DNA of 64,000 nt from the sequence record AP017925.1; one strand, 5' to 3'. This document shows, in pieces, positions 7,505 through 63,812 of this stretch. Numbering within the stretch: position 1 is the stretch's first letter; each line of letters opens with the position of its first letter. The notes beneath the pieces were generated by a model, which saw only the letters and a list, made by a program, of their open reading frames with translations, was not told where the DNA came from and did no database searches. The position numbers and the translations under genes are program-made.

Positions 7505-8797
7505 TTATTTCCCTTTCTTCTCCAGCCACTTGTTGGAGATGACCTTGACGCTCTGGCCAGTTACGTGGCTCTTGATCACGAGACCTTCACGGATACCGTT
7601 CGGATCACCGAAAGCTTTGCCATCGGCCATCTTCAGCAGCTCTTTCATGTCTGGTGGCAGCTTCATCCGTTCGGCTTCGAGCGGAATGTACTGCAGACCC
7701 AGCGCTTCGGTTACCAGCTTGGTCTGTTCCGGCAGCAGCCGGCGATTGCCGTTGGCATATGCGCGGTAGACATAGAACTGGTTGTGCTTAAGACGCTCGG
7801 CATTGCCGTTGAAGTCCGGCCCTACCATCTCGCCCTGGATGGCCAACACAGCGCCATTCATGAAGTCGAAGGTATTCGCGCGGTTGAACGATGCGAGCTT
7901 AGTGTCGATCGCATTGCGCTTGAAGAAGGCCACCAACGGCACGGACTGAGCGATATAGCCGCGCTTCCACTGGGGAACAGCGCAACGACCACCAGCCAGT
8001 TTACGAGCGATATAGCGCACCCAATCAGCAGCGTAAACGCGCCACGATTCCTTACGAGTGTACGGAACGTCATCGGTACGCAGCGACCAGTTGCGTTGGG
8101 CAACACCGATAGCACCGGTATCCAGATCGGTGTAGAAGGTAGCCGATTCGCCATCGAGTTTGAACGAGGCTTCAACGTCTTGGTCTTCTGCCACCATTTG
8201 GTTGTAGAGCGCGCTTTGGTTCTGCACACGTTCTTCATCGGACTTGACGTGTCCTGCCGGCCAAGCCTGCAGTCCGTCTGCGACGATACCTTTCTTCAAC
8301 CAGGCGCACAGCTTCCAGATCAGCTTGCGGGTAGTGCTTGCATCGGCAGGCGCCGACTCGCTTTCCAGCTGATACAGTTTGGCTTCTTGCGGTGACACGT
8401 ACTTCAGCACGTCGATCATGTTGGTCACGTTCAAGCCAACATCGCTCTTGTTCGGGATCGTCGCCGGGATATAACTTGCCGGCAGCAGCAGACCCTGAGA
8501 CAGCTGACCGCGCAGGCGCACAGTCTTAACCACTGTCCAATCCTTGCCAGTTGCTTCATCCTTGGTGACCTTCAGGTACTGCTTGTCGAAGCTAGCCAGC
8601 ACCGGGTTGTCCAGCGCAATAGCTGCATCGATTTCGAGGTACAGACCGATGTCGCCTTTGGCAAACGAGCCCTTAGCGATCACGCATTCCCAGCCTTCGA
8701 CCACCGCAACTTCCAGACGATCGGCCTTGGGAATAGGTCGGACGTCATCGACCCGCACGATACGAGCCAGCTTTCGTGTTTCTTCTTTGACTAACAT
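7505..8797 (-). CDS. ATP-dependent RNA ligase, Rnl2/DRB0094-like, with N-terminal OB-fold tRNA-binding-like domain
   Basis: Motif I KLDGES, III QGEMVGP, IIIa FYVY, IV EGLVIK, V KVIS; N-terminus VRPIPKADRLEVAVVEGWECV typical of this family. Confidence 0.9.
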   Translation of the reverse strand: MLVKEETRKLARIVRVDDVRPIPKADRLEVAVVEGWECVIAKGSFAKGDIGLYLEIDAAIALDNPVLASFDKQYLKVTKDEATGKDWTVVKTVRLRGQLSQGLLLPASYIPATIPNKSDVGLNVTNMIDVLKYVSPQEAKLYQLESESAPADASTTRKLIWKLCAWLKKGIVADGLQAWPAGHVKSDEERVQNQSALYNQMVAEDQDVEASFKLDGESATFYTDLDTGAIGVAQRNWSLRTDDVPYTRKESWRVYAADWVRYIARKLAGGRCAVPQWKRGYIAQSVPLVAFFKRNAIDTKLASFNRANTFDFMNGAVLAIQGEMVGPDFNGNAERLKHNQFYVYRAYANGNRRLLPEQTKLVTEALGLQYIPLEAERMKLPPDMKELLKMADGKAFGDPNGIREGLVIKSHVTGQSVKVISNKWLEKKGK

Positions 8798-53234: not shown

Positions 53235-53535
53235 TTTGTGCCCGGACGGTGTTCTCTCCTAAGCGAGGTACTATGCGTCCGCATTCGAATTGTAGAAGAA
53301 AGCACTGTGTCTCCCGACATGAGTGCAGTCTTGTGGTCACTACTGGCCTAGTGCTAAAAATAGAAGTGCTTTTCCGAGGTCTCAATGACTCACGGATGTT
53401 TCGCCAATGCAGTTCGGCCGTGCAGAGTTCTCATGCCCAAGGGCCTGTGCTGTGTCCCCGCGATGGGGTTTAATCAGCCGTGTACGACGTTTGAGAACTG
53501 TGCTTCGTTTCCACATAACATAGGGTGCTACCCTG
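53235..53535. ncRNA. candidate structured non-coding RNA
   Basis: No convincing ORF; nested stems AGTTCTCA/TGAGAACT, GCCC/GGGC, GCTG/CAGC, CCCC/GGGG, AGGGT/ACCCT. Confidence 0.3.
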
Positions 53536-53976
53536 TTATTTTTTACCCTGACTACTCTTGATCTCATTCATCAGCGCTTCGATCTCTTGATTCTGAGCCG
53601 GTGTGCGCTTATCCAGTATCTCCAACATCAAGTCGCAGACATACGTTGGTTGATTAATGAAATCAGTCCAAGACAGGTGGAAGTGCTGCCCGATGCGTGC
53701 ATCGAGATATGCTTCCATACGCTCGCGCAAGCGAGAGGCAACAATCGTGTCTTCGCACCAGTGATGTCTCACCAGCGCGAAGTGATCATTAACCCCTTGG
53801 TGGTTGTAAATCCCATACGCCTGCTCATACCGCTCACGCAAGAGGATCTGCACGTCGGTACTCACGAAGCGCTTGGGCACTTTCGAGATGTCTTCCGTGT
53901 GATCCTCAATGCGAACTCCGTAGCCGAACTTCCAGTCTCCCACATGGGAGACTGAATTGATTTCGGCATCGGTCAT
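53536..53976 (-). CDS. hypothetical protein, possible frameshift extension of the upstream gene (tail/baseplate chaperone-like)
   Basis: In the -1 frame of the upstream ORF; ATG has no SD and lies in an 8-bp stem; FHLSWTDFINQP resembles gpT/gp51-type chaperone tails. Confidence 0.6.
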   Translation of the reverse strand: MTDAEINSVSHVGDWKFGYGVRIEDHTEDISKVPKRFVSTDVQILLRERYEQAYGIYNHQGVNDHFALVRHHWCEDTIVASRLRERMEAYLDARIGQHFHLSWTDFINQPTYVCDLMLEILDKRTPAQNQEIEALMNEIKSSQGKK

Positions 53977-55622
53977 CAGCGGCGGCTGATGATAGCGACG
54001 CGCTGCGCGAGTAGGGTAAAAAAAGTGTTCACCACATCGATCGGGATCAGGTGCGGGAAGCGCGGCAGGCCGATTTCCTTACCGCTGGTTTCCGGGATCG
54101 CAACCAAGGCGCGAGTGCAATCGTCCTTGAATTTGTTGATCTCGGTTTCCAACAGCTTGGTAGCGTCTTCATCGACGGAGAGCACGTCCAGAATGCTTGC
54201 GATGTCATCGCGGTTCGTGTTCTCGGTTTCATCGATGATCACCGACTTGATCCAGGCGCCGTTATTGCGCAGGCGGGAAGCCCGGGCGTGCGTCGAGATC
54301 ATGCGGTTACGCTCTTCCTGGGTCGGTACGGCTTGGGTGAACGTAGAGTCCACCGTGGCCACGATACCGGCAATCCAGTTCTCACCGTCGGCGATGTAGT
54401 TGTCGACGTCGGTCGAAGCAATCAGCACGTCCAGACCTTCACGGATCGTAACGCGACGGCCATCGGCCAGCGACGGAATGAACGTCTGCTGATATTCCTT
54501 CACCATCTCCATGGACATCTTGCCGCGATGACGGTTGGCCATGTGGGCACGATGGCGCGGTTCGAAGCTGGCGTTGTCCACCCACATCAGCTTACCGAGA
54601 GCGATCTTGGCCGAGACGGTTTGGGTGTTCTCGATCCCTTCCTGGGTAGTCAGGGAACGCACGTAGTCGAAACCACGCGGCCAGATCAAACAAGCCAGAC
54701 CCCAGAACAGGATGTTCAGGTCTTGGATCTTGATCAGCGGACGCAGTTCCTGATGGCTGTCCACACGCACCGAGGTCTCGTAGATGTGCTCGAAGCAGAA
54801 GTCGAGCAGCCACGAGTTGATGTAGCTCTGTTCGTTGGAGAACACCAGGCCAAAGGTCTCACGACCCAGCTCGATCTTCTCTTCTTGCAGACGACGCTGC
54901 AATTCAATCAGGCTGCTCTCGGTCGGAGTCTGGAGGGTAATCCAGAAACCGGAGTGCCAGAGCGGAATCGATACGATACCGCCCAGACCCATGATCGAGC
55001 GGACGCGCATGATGCCCTTCTCGCCGGTGTAACCAGCCGCGCCTGCTTCAGCAATCTTCGGCACAGAGAAGCCGAGCTTACCCGATTCCGTTTCGAGGAA
55101 CTGCTTGTAGTCGGAACCATCACGCAGGGTGGTGGATTCGAATCGACCGTCCAGATAAGCACTGCGGCTAGCTGCAGCCACGATACTCTGGTTCCAGTCG
55201 GCGCCAGCGCCGTTCTTGATCGAGTTGGGCGAGACAAAGGCCCGGATGCGCTCGTCAACAGCAGCACCGCGCTCGGCCAGGAAGAACATCACTTCGGAAT
55301 TGCCGTCGAGGTCGTTGCGATCTTTCAGCGCCACCGGTTCCTTGAGGTTGTAATCCATCGTCAGGGTAACGTGCTTGTTATCCGACGGGCCAGTGGTCAT
55401 GCCTTCCCAGGCATCGGTAGGAGTTACCAGGCTGAGACCGCCAGAGGTCTGGCCGACCATAACCGGACGTTCCTTCGGCGCCGCAGCGGCAGGAGTGGGA
55501 GTCGCAGCAGCTTGAGTCAGACTCGGAGCGACTGCTTCGGTAATTACAGGCTCCGGAGAGGCCGGAGCAGAAGAAGTGGCTTGCGCCACCTCCCCTTGTT
55601 CGAGTTGTTGGTTGTCGTTCAT
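53976..55622 (-). CDS. conserved hypothetical protein, possible tail/baseplate assembly chaperone (phiKZ gp77-like position)
   Basis: Start MNDNQQ at 55622; 548 aa; disordered N-terminus; T-TTT-TTT slippery run near the 3' end. Confidence 0.75.
   Translation of the reverse strand: MNDNQQLEQGEVAQATSSAPASPEPVITEAVAPSLTQAAATPTPAAAAPKERPVMVGQTSGGLSLVTPTDAWEGMTTGPSDNKHVTLTMDYNLKEPVALKDRNDLDGNSEVMFFLAERGAAVDERIRAFVSPNSIKNGAGADWNQSIVAAASRSAYLDGRFESTTLRDGSDYKQFLETESGKLGFSVPKIAEAGAAGYTGEKGIMRVRSIMGLGGIVSIPLWHSGFWITLQTPTESSLIELQRRLQEEKIELGRETFGLVFSNEQSYINSWLLDFCFEHIYETSVRVDSHQELRPLIKIQDLNILFWGLACLIWPRGFDYVRSLTTQEGIENTQTVSAKIALGKLMWVDNASFEPRHRAHMANRHRGKMSMEMVKEYQQTFIPSLADGRRVTIREGLDVLIASTDVDNYIADGENWIAGIVATVDSTFTQAVPTQEERNRMISTHARASRLRNNGAWIKSVIIDETENTNRDDIASILDVLSVDEDATKLLETEINKFKDDCTRALVAIPETSGKEIGLPRFPHLIPIDVVNTFFTLLAQRVAIISRR
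54018..54024 (-). promoter_or_regulatory. candidate -1 programmed frameshift site T TTT TTT
   Basis: ACT TTT TTT ACC in frame 0; the -1 frame is open into 53536..53976. Confidence 0.5.
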
Positions 55623-57494: not shown

Positions 57495-58823
57495 ATGAAC
57501 AAGCGTGAGTTTTATCTCAAAGCTCTAGCCTCCGAGGCTTACCTCGTGACGGCCTGGAACATTGCTTGCTTCAGTCTGATTGCCGAAGGGCCGGAAGACT
57601 GGAAAGCCAAGCCCTATCCGTATCGACTGGTGCAACTCCCCAACGCGCACTACTTCGTCGATCCTGAAGACACCACCAAACTGGTGTTGATCGAAGACAG
57701 CACACCCGGCAAACCACTCTTTGTCCGCAATGAGCTGGTGCAGCTTGAACCCGGCGATATGCCGAACGTGTTTGCTCCGATTACCACCACGTACGGTAAC
57801 GTGCTGGCCAACCAGATCATGCTGGTGCGTCCGTTCGGTGGGAAGATCGGTTTTATGACTGGCCGTATCTCGACCAAGAAGATCGAGAAGATCATCGAGA
57901 TGCGGTTGCAGGATCGTCCGGCGGCTGAACTGGTAGATGGCAATCAGCCCGAACCAGATTTGGCACTGGCCCCGATCTACGTAGATGAGTATCAGCGCTA
58001 CTGCGACGGAGCTTTCTCACTGGTAGCCTATACCCAGCTGTTCACTCCAGCCGATACCCGCAAGACCATGACACCGCCACCGGGTATCAAGCAACTGCGT
58101 GATATGCTGGTCAAGCAGAACGCTGGTCACCTGCATGACCGTGCTGTGGTGGCTGAGATCGCCGAGAAACTCCAAAAGGTCGATGCTGACTACCTGAAGG
58201 GCGATCGTGGTGAAGACTTCCTGACTTCTGACAAGTCCCGCAAGATCGTGCGCTCACGTCTGTTCCTGATGTACGGTGCGGAAACCGGCATTGAAGAAAA
58301 GGTGGACGTGGATCTGATCGAACGCTCACTCACGGAAGGCTGGGACGTTAACAAGTTCCCGACCATGAACAATGCTCTGCGTGCAGGCTCGTTCAACCGT
58401 GGTAAGCAAACCGAGCTGGGTGGCGAAGCTGTGAAGGATCTGTTCAGAGCTTCGGGTAACCTGAAGATCTCCAGTCCTGACTGTGGCTCCACCGTAGGTC
58501 TGCCTTCCTTCTTCACTGAACAAGACGCTGAACGCATCATCGGCTTCAGTGTGATTGAAGAAGGTGGCCCGACCAAGATCACGCATGACAACGTCGGTAA
58601 GTATCTGGGCAAAGCAATTTCGCTCCGTTCTCCGATGACCTGCAAGAACAGTCACACTGACTACTGTGCAGTGTGTCTGGGTGATCGTCTGGCTAACACT
58701 CCGACTGGTCTGTCGATGGCTGTGGCTGATTATGGTTCTGCCTTCTTGGCGATCTACATGTCTGCCGCTCACTCGAAAGGTATTCAGGTAGCACGTCTGA
58801 ATATCAAAGACCAGCTGATGTAG
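57495..58823 (+). CDS. split RNA polymerase beta-prime middle subunit, virion RNAP type (phiKZ gp80-like)
   Basis: Bridge-helix-like GSFNRGKQTELGG and Zn site DCGS...RSPMTC...CAVCLG as in the beta-prime C-terminal Zn domain. Confidence 0.85.
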   Translation: MNKREFYLKALASEAYLVTAWNIACFSLIAEGPEDWKAKPYPYRLVQLPNAHYFVDPEDTTKLVLIEDSTPGKPLFVRNELVQLEPGDMPNVFAPITTTYGNVLANQIMLVRPFGGKIGFMTGRISTKKIEKIIEMRLQDRPAAELVDGNQPEPDLALAPIYVDEYQRYCDGAFSLVAYTQLFTPADTRKTMTPPPGIKQLRDMLVKQNAGHLHDRAVVAEIAEKLQKVDADYLKGDRGEDFLTSDKSRKIVRSRLFLMYGAETGIEEKVDVDLIERSLTEGWDVNKFPTMNNALRAGSFNRGKQTELGGEAVKDLFRASGNLKISSPDCGSTVGLPSFFTEQDAERIIGFSVIEEGGPTKITHDNVGKYLGKAISLRSPMTCKNSHTDYCAVCLGDRLANTPTGLSMAVADYGSAFLAIYMSAAHSKGIQVARLNIKDQLM

Positions 58824-58853
58824 GGCAAAAAAAAAATAGCAAGATAGGCTAGG

Positions 58854-63796: not shown

Positions 63797-63812
63797 CAGC
63801 AAAAAAAAACAG

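What the first reader, a model, noticed from the sequence alone, without database searches (positions are those of the whole stretch)
53536..55622. Candidate -1 programmed ribosomal frameshift joining a 548-aa ORF to the next ORF (G/GT-like architecture in a jumbo phage)
Seen in sequence: 13 codons before the stop, frame 0 reads AAC ACT TTT TTT ACC, a T-TTT-TTT slippery heptamer (54018-54024). The -1 frame is closed by a TAA about 19 codons upstream, then runs open (F-Y-P-T-R-A-A-R-R-Y-H-Q-P-P-L-M) into 53536..53976. That ORF's ATG has no Shine-Dalgarno, overlaps the TGA and is buried in a perfect 8-bp stem (TCATCAGC/GCTGATGA, 53973-53992). The products would be 548 aa and a 695-aa fusion. Established: tailed phages make G and GT tail assembly chaperones this way, and P2 E/E' slips on a U run. 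Inference: the downstream ORF's LSWxxFxxxP segment resembles such chaperone tails, but this ORF is far longer than usual and no tape-measure gene lies nearby in this window.
Basis: partly seen in the sequence, partly recalled or inferred. Interest (0 to 1): 0.85.

Follow-up and report, generated by a model that had tools for sequence, protein, structure and literature searches.

The report
Conserved -1 frameshift in jumbo-phage core gene
A run of seven T's near the end of a 548-codon gene of Ralstonia jumbo phage RP31/RP12 is very likely a real ribosomal slip site that adds a hidden 150-residue tail to some copies of the protein, and the same unannotated arrangement occurs in nearly every phiKZ-like phage examined.

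Summary
The window is Ralstonia phage RP31/RP12. Gene A (ORF252, 548 aa, ortholog of phiKZ gp077) carries an in-frame T_TTT_TTT 13 codons before its stop. The -1 frame runs open from there into ORF251 (B, 146 aa).

Comparison decides the question. In 77 of 79 related loci a T5-T8 run sits at the same conserved Phe-Phe position. These loci come from Ralstonia, Burkholderia, Xanthomonas, Erwinia, Pseudomonas, Escherichia and Bacillus phages and from metagenomes. In each of them the -1 frame stays open for 123-177 codons past the A stop.

The first possible start codon in that frame falls anywhere from 15 codons before to 125 codons after the stop. RP31's ATG is the exception. In phiKZ itself 73 start-less codons lie in an annotated gap. 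At the site, Phe codons are TTT 133 : TTC 11, against 398 : 669 elsewhere in the gene.

A is not a lambda G/GT family member. Its confident model has no PDB match, but it weakly and repeatedly matches T4-type baseplate hub assembly chaperones.

I found no published description. This is a new member of a known kind of recoding, with no direct protein evidence yet.

The parts
53976..55622 (-). Gene A (RP31 ORF252, BAW19515; ortholog of phiKZ gp077 / PhiPA3 gp074 / Goslar gp081). The frame-0 product is 548 aa. Residues 1-47 are predicted disordered, followed by a confidently folded core.
   Evidence: ORF list and sequence; record annotation; PhiPA3 annotation notes giving the phiKZ, 201phi2-1 and EL equivalents; phrog_4585; AF2 model with pLDDT 81 and pTM 0.81.
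54018..54024 (-). Slippery heptamer T_TTT_TTT, in frame with gene A (ACT TTT TTT). It spans the two nearly invariant Phe codons 534-535.
   Evidence: Sequence. The same position carries a T5-T8 run in 77 of 79 related loci. TTT is strongly preferred at the site.
54079..54081 (-). TAA that closes the -1 frame 18 codons upstream of the run. It marks the upstream limit of the overlap window.
53977..54017 (-). Overlap segment read in both frames. Frame 0 gives the last 13 residues of A, part of a confidently predicted C-terminal helix. The -1 frame gives the 14-codon bridge into B.
   Evidence: Three-frame reading. This stretch is almost identical in FLC4-3B, against 77% identity overall. Frame-0 third positions +3 and +9 are conserved as first positions of -1 codons. 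Helix 530-547 is in the model.
53536..53976 (-). ORF B (RP31 ORF251, BAW19514; phrog_12109; corresponds to PhiPA3 gp073, 201phi2-1 gp135 and phiKZ PHIKZ076.4 plus the unannotated gap before it). It is proposed to be mainly the C-terminal extension of the frameshift product. In RP31 it also has its own ATG (TGATG).
   Evidence: AF2 model pLDDT 90, all-helical.
53973..53992 (-). 8-bp stem with a 4-nt loop that encloses the TGATG junction. It is real in RP31 but not conserved, and it lies too far (25 nt) from the heptamer to be a classical stimulator. It may lower independent initiation at B's ATG (inference).
   Evidence: Folds of RP31 and FLC4-3B; survey of 70 loci.

Best explanation
Gene A and ORF B form one recoded gene.

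Most ribosomes translate gene A in frame 0 and stop at the TGA. This gives a 548-aa protein that ends in a short helix.

A fraction slip back one base while tRNA-Phe occupies the T_TTT_TTT site at codons 534-535. These ribosomes continue in the -1 frame across the A stop and through ORF B. The product is about 695 aa: the last 13 residues of A are replaced by a bridge plus the helical B domain.

This arrangement is ancestral to the whole phiKZ-like (Chimalliviridae and allied) jumbo-phage group. The separate ATG of B in RP31/RP12 is a recent local addition. It may also allow some free B by termination-reinitiation.

Shown: the sequence features and their conservation.

Inferred: that slippage occurs, that it is ribosomal, and its efficiency.

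The protein itself is most likely a non-virion assembly factor distantly related in fold to T4-type baseplate hub assembly chaperones. The two isoforms would then act like lambda G and GT. This functional step is the weakest link, at about 0.4.
For: 1. In-frame T_TTT_TTT 13 codons before the stop, with the -1 frame open from 18 codons upstream into B.

2. FLC4-3B is 77% identical in DNA. It keeps the site and about 60 nt around it almost unchanged but has no ATG for B. Its first ATG/GTG/TTG lies 32 codons past the A stop, inside conserved residues.

3. Survey of 79 loci: 11 from GenBank records (10 surveyed for the site), 65 from IMG/VR, 4 further metagenomic contigs.
- 77 have a T5-T8 run 11-37 codons before the A stop.
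- In those, the -1 frame is open 123-177 codons beyond the stop, while the +1 frame is usually short.
- Heptamers in 70 distinct loci: TTTTTTT 46, TTTTTTC 10, GTTTTTT 5, TTTTTTA 1, TTTTTTG 1, other T5/T6 forms 7.

4. The first canonical start in the -1 frame ranges from -15 to +125 codons relative to the A stop. In 17 of 60 non-redundant loci it lies inside the conserved C-terminal domain of B.

5. In phiKZ-type genomes the first start is 73 codons past the stop. The phiKZ record shows PHIKZ077, a 218-nt 'gap', then an 80-aa PHIKZ076.4.

6. The start-less stretch is as conserved as the rest of B: pairwise identity 0.25 against 0.21. See also the alignment.

7. Codon choice at the site is TTT 133: TTC 11, against 398: 669 in the rest of gene A (Fisher p = 4e-39). 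In loci with GC of 0.50 or more it is 66: 5 against 100: 391. The first Phe codon is TTT in 75 of 75 loci.

8. Frame-0 synonymous positions just after the site are fixed where they are first positions of -1 codons: +3 C in 58/70 and +9 C in 51/70.

9. A B-domain profile was searched against 1.84 billion representative proteins. It found 666 hits. All of the best 150 are 57-169 aa with ragged N-termini, and none is an in-frame A-B fusion. The two-frame layout is therefore maintained, not resolved.

10. Function:
- AF2 model of A has pLDDT 81 and pTM 0.81.
- Foldseek against BFVD gives repeated matches to 'Baseplate hub assembly protein, bacteriophage T4-like', 'Baseplate hub subunit' and 'Baseplate hub assembly chaperone', with E from 5.7e-4 to 5e-2, probability 0.95 or more, and target TM 0.42-0.54.
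- T4 gp26 and gp51 are listed as hub assembly chaperones, and gp51 is absent from the particle (PMC3004832).
- Goslar gp81/gp82 are never mentioned in the paper describing a 28-protein cryo-EM virion model.
Against: - No peptide, ribosome-profiling or size evidence for the long product is available here.
- No stimulatory element was found. Folding energies of the 70 nt downstream are ordinary (mean z = -0.34; 7 of 70 below -2). No conserved Shine-Dalgarno-like motif sits at a helpful distance upstream. Efficiency may therefore be low.
- RP31 itself has an ATG overlapping the stop, so B could be made on its own in this phage.
- About 13 of 70 loci have weaker sites (G_TTT_TTT, T5/T6 forms). One small clade combines T5/T6 with an ATG 9 codons past the stop.
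- The loci are phylogenetically related, so the p-values overstate independence.
- One of the three peptide patterns used to fetch IMG/VR loci contained the Phe-Phe motif. This biases towards Phe-Phe but not towards TTT.
- The functional assignment rests on modest Foldseek scores only. Pfam, NCBIfam, PHROG annotation, PDB sequence and PDB fold searches gave nothing.
- The phiKZ gp077 ortholog of phage Churi was listed among proteins detected early in infection (PMC11849849). That fits a late tail-assembly role poorly.
Confidence: 0.8

Rival explanations
1. Transcriptional slippage. The phage (or host) RNA polymerase stutters on the T run and adds one U to a fraction of transcripts. Ordinary translation of the edited mRNA then gives the same A-B fusion.
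For: The site is a pure homopolymer. No RNA structure or internal Shine-Dalgarno stimulator is conserved. These phages transcribe with their own unusual multisubunit polymerases; a beta-prime-like subunit gene lies next door.
Against: Run lengths are 5-8, mostly 7, and 18 of the 73 loci with a run have only 5 or 6. From my own knowledge, documented bacterial cases need about 8-9 or more. The run is always placed on the Phe-Phe codons so that a P/A-site or single tRNA-Phe re-pairing is possible. Neither point excludes slippage by a polymerase of unknown properties.
Confidence: 0.1
2. Two ordinary, separately initiated genes. In RP31 they would be coupled by the TGATG overlap; elsewhere B would start at GTG, TTG or non-canonical codons. 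The T run would be only the way Phe-Phe happens to be encoded.
For: RP31/RP12 have an ATG exactly at the stop, a common coupling layout that by itself puts B in the -1 frame. Every database record and gene caller treats B as a separate small ORF.
Against: There is no conserved start. Positions scatter over 140 codons and often fall inside the conserved domain. Homology extends upstream of the annotated starts. The -1 frame is open from the run onward in all 77 loci that carry a run, which separate genes do not need. The TTT bias at the site is extreme even in GC-rich genomes. Four further RP31-clade contigs lack the ATG.
Confidence: 0.07
3. An artefact: a homopolymer sequencing error or a decaying gene, so that A and B are really one uninterrupted ORF or a pseudogene.
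For: Homopolymer runs are error-prone. Two records (RTH11 and one IMG/VR contig) have the frame of gene A interrupted once each.
Against: The same two-frame layout recurs in independently sequenced isolates and metagenomes over a wide identity range (21-100% protein identity). Frame 0 after the run encodes a conserved, confidently modelled helix followed by a stop. No in-frame fusion appears among the best 150 of 666 B-domain hits.
Confidence: 0.02

Closest known systems
Lambda G/GT and the conserved tail assembly chaperone frameshift of long-tailed phages (Xu, Hendrix and Duda 2004; cited from my own knowledge)
   Same: A -1 slip near the end of an upstream ORF yields a short product and a C-terminally extended one. 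The downstream ORF usually has no start of its own. The layout is conserved while the sequences diverge. The proteins are probably assembly factors absent from the virion.
   Different: Gene A is 548 aa, not roughly 100-150. It lies among polymerase, helicase and unknown genes, not between tail tube and tape measure genes. It has no sequence match to any chaperone family. Only non-significant fold hits to tail assembly chaperones were found (E 0.5-2.3).
Phage P2 E / E+E' frameshift on a T run
   Same: The slippery sequence is a run of T's with no strong stimulatory structure. One surveyed locus even has TTTTTTG.
   Different: P2 E/E' is a small G/GT-type pair inside the tail operon. There is no detectable homology to A or B.
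T4-type baseplate hub assembly chaperones (gp26 / gp51 class; PMC3004832)
   Same: This is the only annotated fold relative of A. About ten BFVD entries with such names match with probability 0.95 or more. T4 gp51 is required for assembly but absent from the particle. Goslar gp81/gp82 are not mentioned in the virion-structure paper. One Bacillus phage and one Erwinia phage ortholog carry 'baseplate' annotations.
   Different: Those proteins are 238-312 aa and align to only part of A (query TM 0.25-0.31). No sequence-level signal was found. To my knowledge no frameshift is described for them. I could not tell from the hit names whether they are of the gp26 or the gp51 type.
E. coli dnaX tau/gamma (from my own knowledge)
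   Same: A -1 slip on a homopolymeric heptamer makes two isoforms of one protein that share the N-terminal body and differ at the C-terminus, in a fixed ratio.
   Different: In dnaX the shifted product is the shorter one, and the slip is driven by a strong upstream Shine-Dalgarno-like element and a downstream hairpin. Neither element is conserved here.

Membership tests
Programmed -1 ribosomal frameshift site | In-frame slippery heptamer X_XXY_YYZ that allows tRNA re-pairing in the -1 frame | tested here: met
   T_TTT_TTT sits in frame in the window. 58 of 70 distinct related loci have TTTTTTN in frame, and the rest have G_TTT_TTY or T5/T6 forms that still allow a tRNA-Phe slip.
Programmed -1 ribosomal frameshift site | The -1 frame is open from the site into a conserved coding region that lacks its own conserved initiation signal | tested here: met
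   In 77 of 79 loci the -1 frame is open 123-177 codons past the stop. The first start is scattered from -15 to +125 codons.
Programmed -1 ribosomal frameshift site | Purifying selection on the site itself (synonymous constraint) | tested here: met
   TTT 133: TTC 11 at the site against 398: 669 elsewhere in the gene. Positions +3 and +9 are fixed. Phylogenetic non-independence was not corrected.
Programmed -1 ribosomal frameshift site | Stimulatory element: a downstream hairpin or pseudoknot 5-9 nt away, or an upstream Shine-Dalgarno-like sequence | tested here: not met
   No enrichment of downstream structure (mean z = -0.34) and no conserved upstream motif beyond what the protein motif explains. 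RP31's stem is 25 nt away and is not conserved. Pseudoknots were not searched. From my own knowledge, this feature is common but not obligatory in bacteria.
Programmed -1 ribosomal frameshift site | A trans-frame protein is actually produced | not testable with these tools
   No proteomic or ribosome-profiling data were at hand.
Lambda G/GT-type tail assembly chaperone pair | Position between the tail tube gene and the tape measure gene | tested here: not met
   The neighbours are phiKZ gp78/gp79-like unknowns, an RNA polymerase subunit, a nuclease, a DNA polymerase and a helicase.
Lambda G/GT-type tail assembly chaperone pair | Small upstream protein (about 100-150 aa) with sequence or profile membership of a chaperone family | tested here: not met
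   A is 548 aa. No Pfam, NCBIfam or annotated PHROG hit was found.
Lambda G/GT-type tail assembly chaperone pair | Chaperone fold | tested here: inconclusive
   Several tail assembly or pre-tape-measure chaperones appear among the BFVD hits, but at E 0.5-2.3 and over about 120-150 columns only.
T4-type baseplate hub assembly protein | Fold similarity to named family members | tested here: inconclusive
   About ten named BFVD hits with E from 5.7e-4 to 5e-2, probability 0.95 or more, target TM 0.42-0.54 and query TM 0.25-0.31. No solved structure of the family was found in the PDB search.
T4-type baseplate hub assembly protein | Sequence-profile membership | tested here: not met
   No Pfam hit for eight diverse orthologs at E up to 0.1. 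No annotated PHROG hit at E up to 10.
T4-type baseplate hub assembly protein | Needed for assembly but absent from the finished particle | tested here: inconclusive
   Goslar gp81/gp82 are not mentioned anywhere in the paper describing a 28-protein virion model. This is absence of mention only. The Churi ortholog was seen in early-infection proteomes.

The most novel reading that the evidence does not exclude
phiKZ-like jumbo phages, and perhaps T4-like phages more widely, may have their own counterpart of the lambda G/GT system: a large hub or tape-measure assembly chaperone whose two isoforms are made in a fixed ratio by a structure-independent slip on a T run. The B domain of the long isoform would recruit a second tail component. 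That would extend the 'universal' tail-chaperone frameshift to the one major group of contractile-tailed phages thought to lack it. It would also give a function to two core genes of unknown role in phiKZ, PhiPA3, 201phi2-1 and Goslar.
Probability: 0.3. Interest if true: 0.75.

Novelty: new member of a known kind. Interest (0 to 1): 0.62.

Why it matters
- Annotation. A core gene pair of the nucleus-forming jumbo phages would have to be re-annotated as one recoded gene in hundreds of genomes. This includes the model phages phiKZ, PhiPA3, 201phi2-1 and Goslar. In phiKZ, about 220 nt now shown as non-coding would become coding, and PHIKZ076.4 would become the tail of a gp077 isoform.
- Experiments. 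Tagging, knock-down, pull-down and structural work on gp077-like proteins have so far considered only the short form.
- Selection. The two-frame layout has been kept over very deep divergence (down to about 21% protein identity, and across Gram-negative and Bacillus hosts). This implies that the ratio of the two isoforms is under selection.
- Mechanism. The site offers a natural example of a bacterial -1 slip that seems to work without a conserved stimulator.
- Function. If the fold link to T4-type hub assembly chaperones holds, it gives a first functional handle on this protein.

Tried and rejected
- Sequence-based function searches found nothing annotated for A or B: Pfam, NCBIfam, PHROGs (also at E up to 10), and PDB by sequence and by profile.
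- Foldseek against PDB gave no match for A or B.
- Rfam found nothing in the region.
- The promoter/terminator scan was uninformative. It showed only a weak hairpin after B.
- An upstream Shine-Dalgarno-like stimulator was rejected. The conserved G/A columns upstream are explained by the Asp-Val/Met codons of the protein motif. RP31's GGTGA lies only 4 nt from the site and is clade-specific.
- The idea that some phages encode A-B as one ORF was rejected for the top 150 of 666 B-domain hits and for all surveyed loci.
- Literature searches for a prior description found none: phiKZ, Chimalliviridae, jumbo phage or 201phi2-1 combined with frameshift or slippery, and gp77, gp077 or PHIKZ077. 'gp77' hits in other papers refer to unrelated genes of other phages.
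I used the permitted alignment A2 instead.
- Not attempted: any search or fold with a two-frame joined product, and pseudoknot prediction.
Full report
**1. What is in the window**

The region is 100% identical to Ralstonia jumbo phage RP31 (AP017925) and RP12. On the minus strand, gene A (RP31 ORF252) runs from the ATG at 55622 to the TGA at 53978-53976, 548 codons. ORF B (ORF251) runs from 53976 to 53536, 146 codons.

Frame 0 reads AAC ACT TTT TTT ACC, with the seven T's at 54024-54018. That is an in-frame X_XXY_YYZ heptamer, and 13 sense codons lie between it and the stop. The -1 frame is shut by a TAA at 54081-54079, 18 codons upstream, and is then open through the run into B.

B's ATG shares one base with the stop (TGATG) and has no Shine-Dalgarno-like sequence. 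It lies in the 3' arm of an 8-bp stem with a 4-nt loop, 53973-53992.

One caution applies. A TGATG or ATGA overlap by itself always places the downstream gene in the -1 frame. The frame relation in RP31 alone therefore proves nothing.

**2. The nearest relative already tips the balance**

Phages FLC4-3B and FLC1-1B are about 77% identical in DNA. In FLC4-3B the roughly 60 nt from the T run to the stop differ at a single base. The ATG of B is absent. The -1 frame goes on encoding residues clearly homologous to the N-terminus of RP31 B. The first ATG, GTG or TTG in that frame comes 32 codons after the A stop, which is where the record annotates a truncated 115-aa protein behind a 95-nt gap.

Four more RP31-clade contigs from metagenomes, 46-76% identical in protein A, all have T7 or T8 at the same place. 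None has the ATG.

**3. Wide survey**

Gene A is a core gene of phiKZ-like phages. tblastn finds it in 176 phage records. It is the ortholog of phiKZ gp077, PhiPA3 gp074, 201phi2-1 gp136 and EL gp47.

I examined the gene end in 79 loci:
- 10 GenBank phages (RP31, FLC4-3B, Burkholderia FLC9, Xanthomonas LucasX and RTH11, Erwinia Asesino, a phiKZ-type Pseudomonas phage, PhiPA3, Escherichia Goslar, Bacillus AgentSmith);
- 65 IMG/VR contigs;
- the 4 contigs above.

In 77 of the 79:
- a T5-T8 run lies 11-37 codons (mostly 13-16) before the A stop, on the nearly invariant Phe-Phe of a conserved C-terminal motif;
- the -1 frame is open from at or before the run for 123-177 codons beyond the stop;
- the +1 frame is usually closed within a few codons in AT-rich genomes.

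In-frame heptamers in 70 distinct loci are TTTTTTT 46, TTTTTTC 10, GTTTTTT 5, TTTTTTA 1, TTTTTTG 1, and other T5/T6 forms 7.

The two exceptions are the RTH11 record and one IMG/VR contig. In each, the reading frame of gene A is interrupted once. I did not repair or analyse them further.

**4. No conserved start for B, and no fused gene either**

The first canonical start in the -1 frame after the run lies anywhere from 15 codons before to 125 codons after the A stop. In an alignment of the -1 translations, these starts scatter over columns 9-228. In 17 of 60 non-redundant loci the first start falls inside the conserved C-terminal domain of B.

Residues between the A stop and the first start are as conserved between phages as the rest of B (0.25 against 0.21 pairwise identity; alignment).

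In phiKZ-type genomes the first start is 73 codons past the stop. The phiKZ record shows PHIKZ077, a 218-nt unannotated stretch, and then an 80-aa PHIKZ076.4 that begins at that internal ATG.

Gene callers give B homologs ragged N-termini of 102-149 aa. A B-domain profile searched against 1.84 billion representative proteins found 666 hits. The best 150 are all 57-169 aa, and none is an in-frame A-B protein. Over this whole divergence the layout has been resolved neither into one ORF nor into two cleanly initiated genes. That is the expected signature when both products are needed.

**5. Selection on the site itself**

Within the run, Phe codons are TTT 133: TTC 11. In the rest of gene A they are 398: 669 (Fisher p = 4e-39). 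In the 37 loci with GC of 0.50 or more the figures are 66: 5 against 100: 391. The first Phe codon is TTT in 75 of 75 loci. RP31's gene A has 4 TTT and 16 TTC, and two of the TTT form the site.

Just downstream, two frame-0 third positions are unusually fixed (+3 C in 58/70, +9 C in 51/70). Other third positions show a commonest-base share of 0.3-0.57. The two fixed positions are first positions of -1-frame codons.

The loci are related by descent, so these numbers overstate independence. The direction is still unambiguous. One of the three patterns used to fetch IMG/VR loci contained the Phe-Phe motif. This can favour Phe-Phe but not TTT over TTC.

**6. Stimulators**

RP31's stem-loop is real, but the 85-nt fold is not unusual (z = -1.4, 20 of 200 shuffles as good). 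It starts 25 nt after the heptamer, and it shrinks to 5 bp in FLC4-3B.

Across 70 loci, the 70 nt after the site fold no better than shuffles (mean z = -0.34; 7 below -2), and there is no common spacing. The conserved bases upstream are those of the Asp and Val/Met codons of the protein motif. Rfam finds nothing.

So the site appears to act without a conserved stimulator. In RP31 the stem may instead hinder independent initiation at the ATG (inference). Pseudoknots were not examined.

**7. Mechanism**

The best reading is ribosomal -1 slippage of tRNA-Phe on the U run. This could be tandem P/A-site slippage on U_UUU_UUN. Where only UUU_UUU or U_UUU is available, it could be single-tRNA slippage, which gives the same protein.

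Transcriptional slippage would give the same product and cannot be excluded with sequence alone. However, 5-7 T's are short for it (my own knowledge), and the run is always locked to the Phe codons.

The shift replaces the last 13 residues of A with a bridge and the B domain. Those 13 residues are part of a confidently predicted terminal helix, 530-547.

**8. What the proteins are**

No family library or PDB sequence search gives a name.

AF2 on a 44-sequence alignment gives a confident model of A: pLDDT 81, pTM 0.81, with only residues 1-47 disordered. It has no PDB fold match (best E 3.5).

Against BFVD it finds its orthologs first. It then repeatedly finds 238-312-aa proteins named 'Baseplate hub assembly protein, bacteriophage T4-like', 'Baseplate hub subunit', 'Baseplate hub assembly chaperone' or 'Baseplate protein'. 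These have E from 5.7e-4 to 5e-2, probability 0.95 or more, and target TM 0.42-0.54. A non-significant tail of the list contains several tail assembly chaperones.

Three further observations bear on function:
- T4 gp26 and gp51 are listed as hub assembly chaperones, and gp51 is not in the particle (PMC3004832).
- Goslar gp81/gp82 are not mentioned in the paper on the 28-protein virion model.
- Against a late assembly role, the Churi ortholog of phiKZ gp077 was listed among proteins detected early in infection (PMC11849849).

B is a small, confidently modelled all-helical domain (pLDDT 90) with a long terminal helix and no fold match.

I put the 'assembly chaperone' reading at about 0.4.

**9. 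Comparison with known systems**

It works like lambda G/GT or P2 E/E+E': a short and a long isoform from a late -1 slip. By position, size and sequence it is not a member of that family. It resembles dnaX in making two isoforms of one body, but it lacks the dnaX stimulators.

The recoding mechanism is a known kind. The gene family, its breadth (a core gene of a whole phage family plus a Bacillus jumbo phage) and the apparent lack of a stimulator are new.

None of ten literature searches found a description. No paper in the library holds both 'slippery' and 'phiKZ'.

**10. Limits**

- There is no protein, ribosome or RNA evidence.
- The efficiency is unknown.
- The function is tentative.
- My working note describes the RTH11 interruption only as a possible homopolymer miscall. 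It gives no coordinates or corrections.

Noticed in passing
window 53503-53522 (-), just downstream of ORF B; L002 about 7871-7890: A 20-nt block beginning TATGTTATGTGG is perfectly conserved between RP31 and FLC4-3B in otherwise diverged intergenic DNA. It is unique in the window (expected 0). In both phages it opens a 15-codon ATG ORF ending at a shared GGCTGA. It could be a small peptide gene or a regulatory or promoter element.
   Followed up: partly
L076 (phiKZ AF399011) 1913-2130; L007 3462-3784: The phiKZ reference annotation leaves a 218-nt gap between PHIKZ077 and PHIKZ076.4. A newer phiKZ-type record fills it with tiny opposite-strand ORFs. This stretch is the open, conserved -1 frame with no start codon.
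   Followed up: yes
L005 (Xanthomonas phage RTH11) and L069 (IMG/VR contig): In these two records the frame of gene A is interrupted once each (frameshift type), so RTH11's annotated protein is 627 aa and runs in a third frame. This may be a sequencing miscall or a real variant. Not repaired and not pursued.
   Followed up: partly
gene A orthologs, alignment A4; window residues about 325-335 and 505-520 of A: Most orthologs carry a Cys...Cys-x-His plus Cys-Pro-x-Cys set, which looks like a zinc site, just before the C-terminal motif. The RP31/FLC9 clade has lost all four ligands.
   Followed up: no
L047, L049, L050 (IMG/VR): One small clade has only T5/T6 at the site (the second Phe is replaced) together with an ATG 9 codons past the A stop. 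This may be a lineage drifting towards independent initiation of B.
   Followed up: no
window 58827-58836 and 63801-63809: These are the two longest homopolymers of the window, A10 and A9 on the plus strand. The first starts three bases after the last base of the ORF annotated as an RNA polymerase beta-prime subunit (57495..58823).
   Followed up: no
gene A N-terminus, window about 55300-55622 (-); L006 659-1400: The N-terminal 50-110 residues of A are Pro/Ala/Glu-rich, unalignable between phages and predicted disordered. Erwinia phage Asesino has expanded this region by about 150 residues.
   Followed up: no
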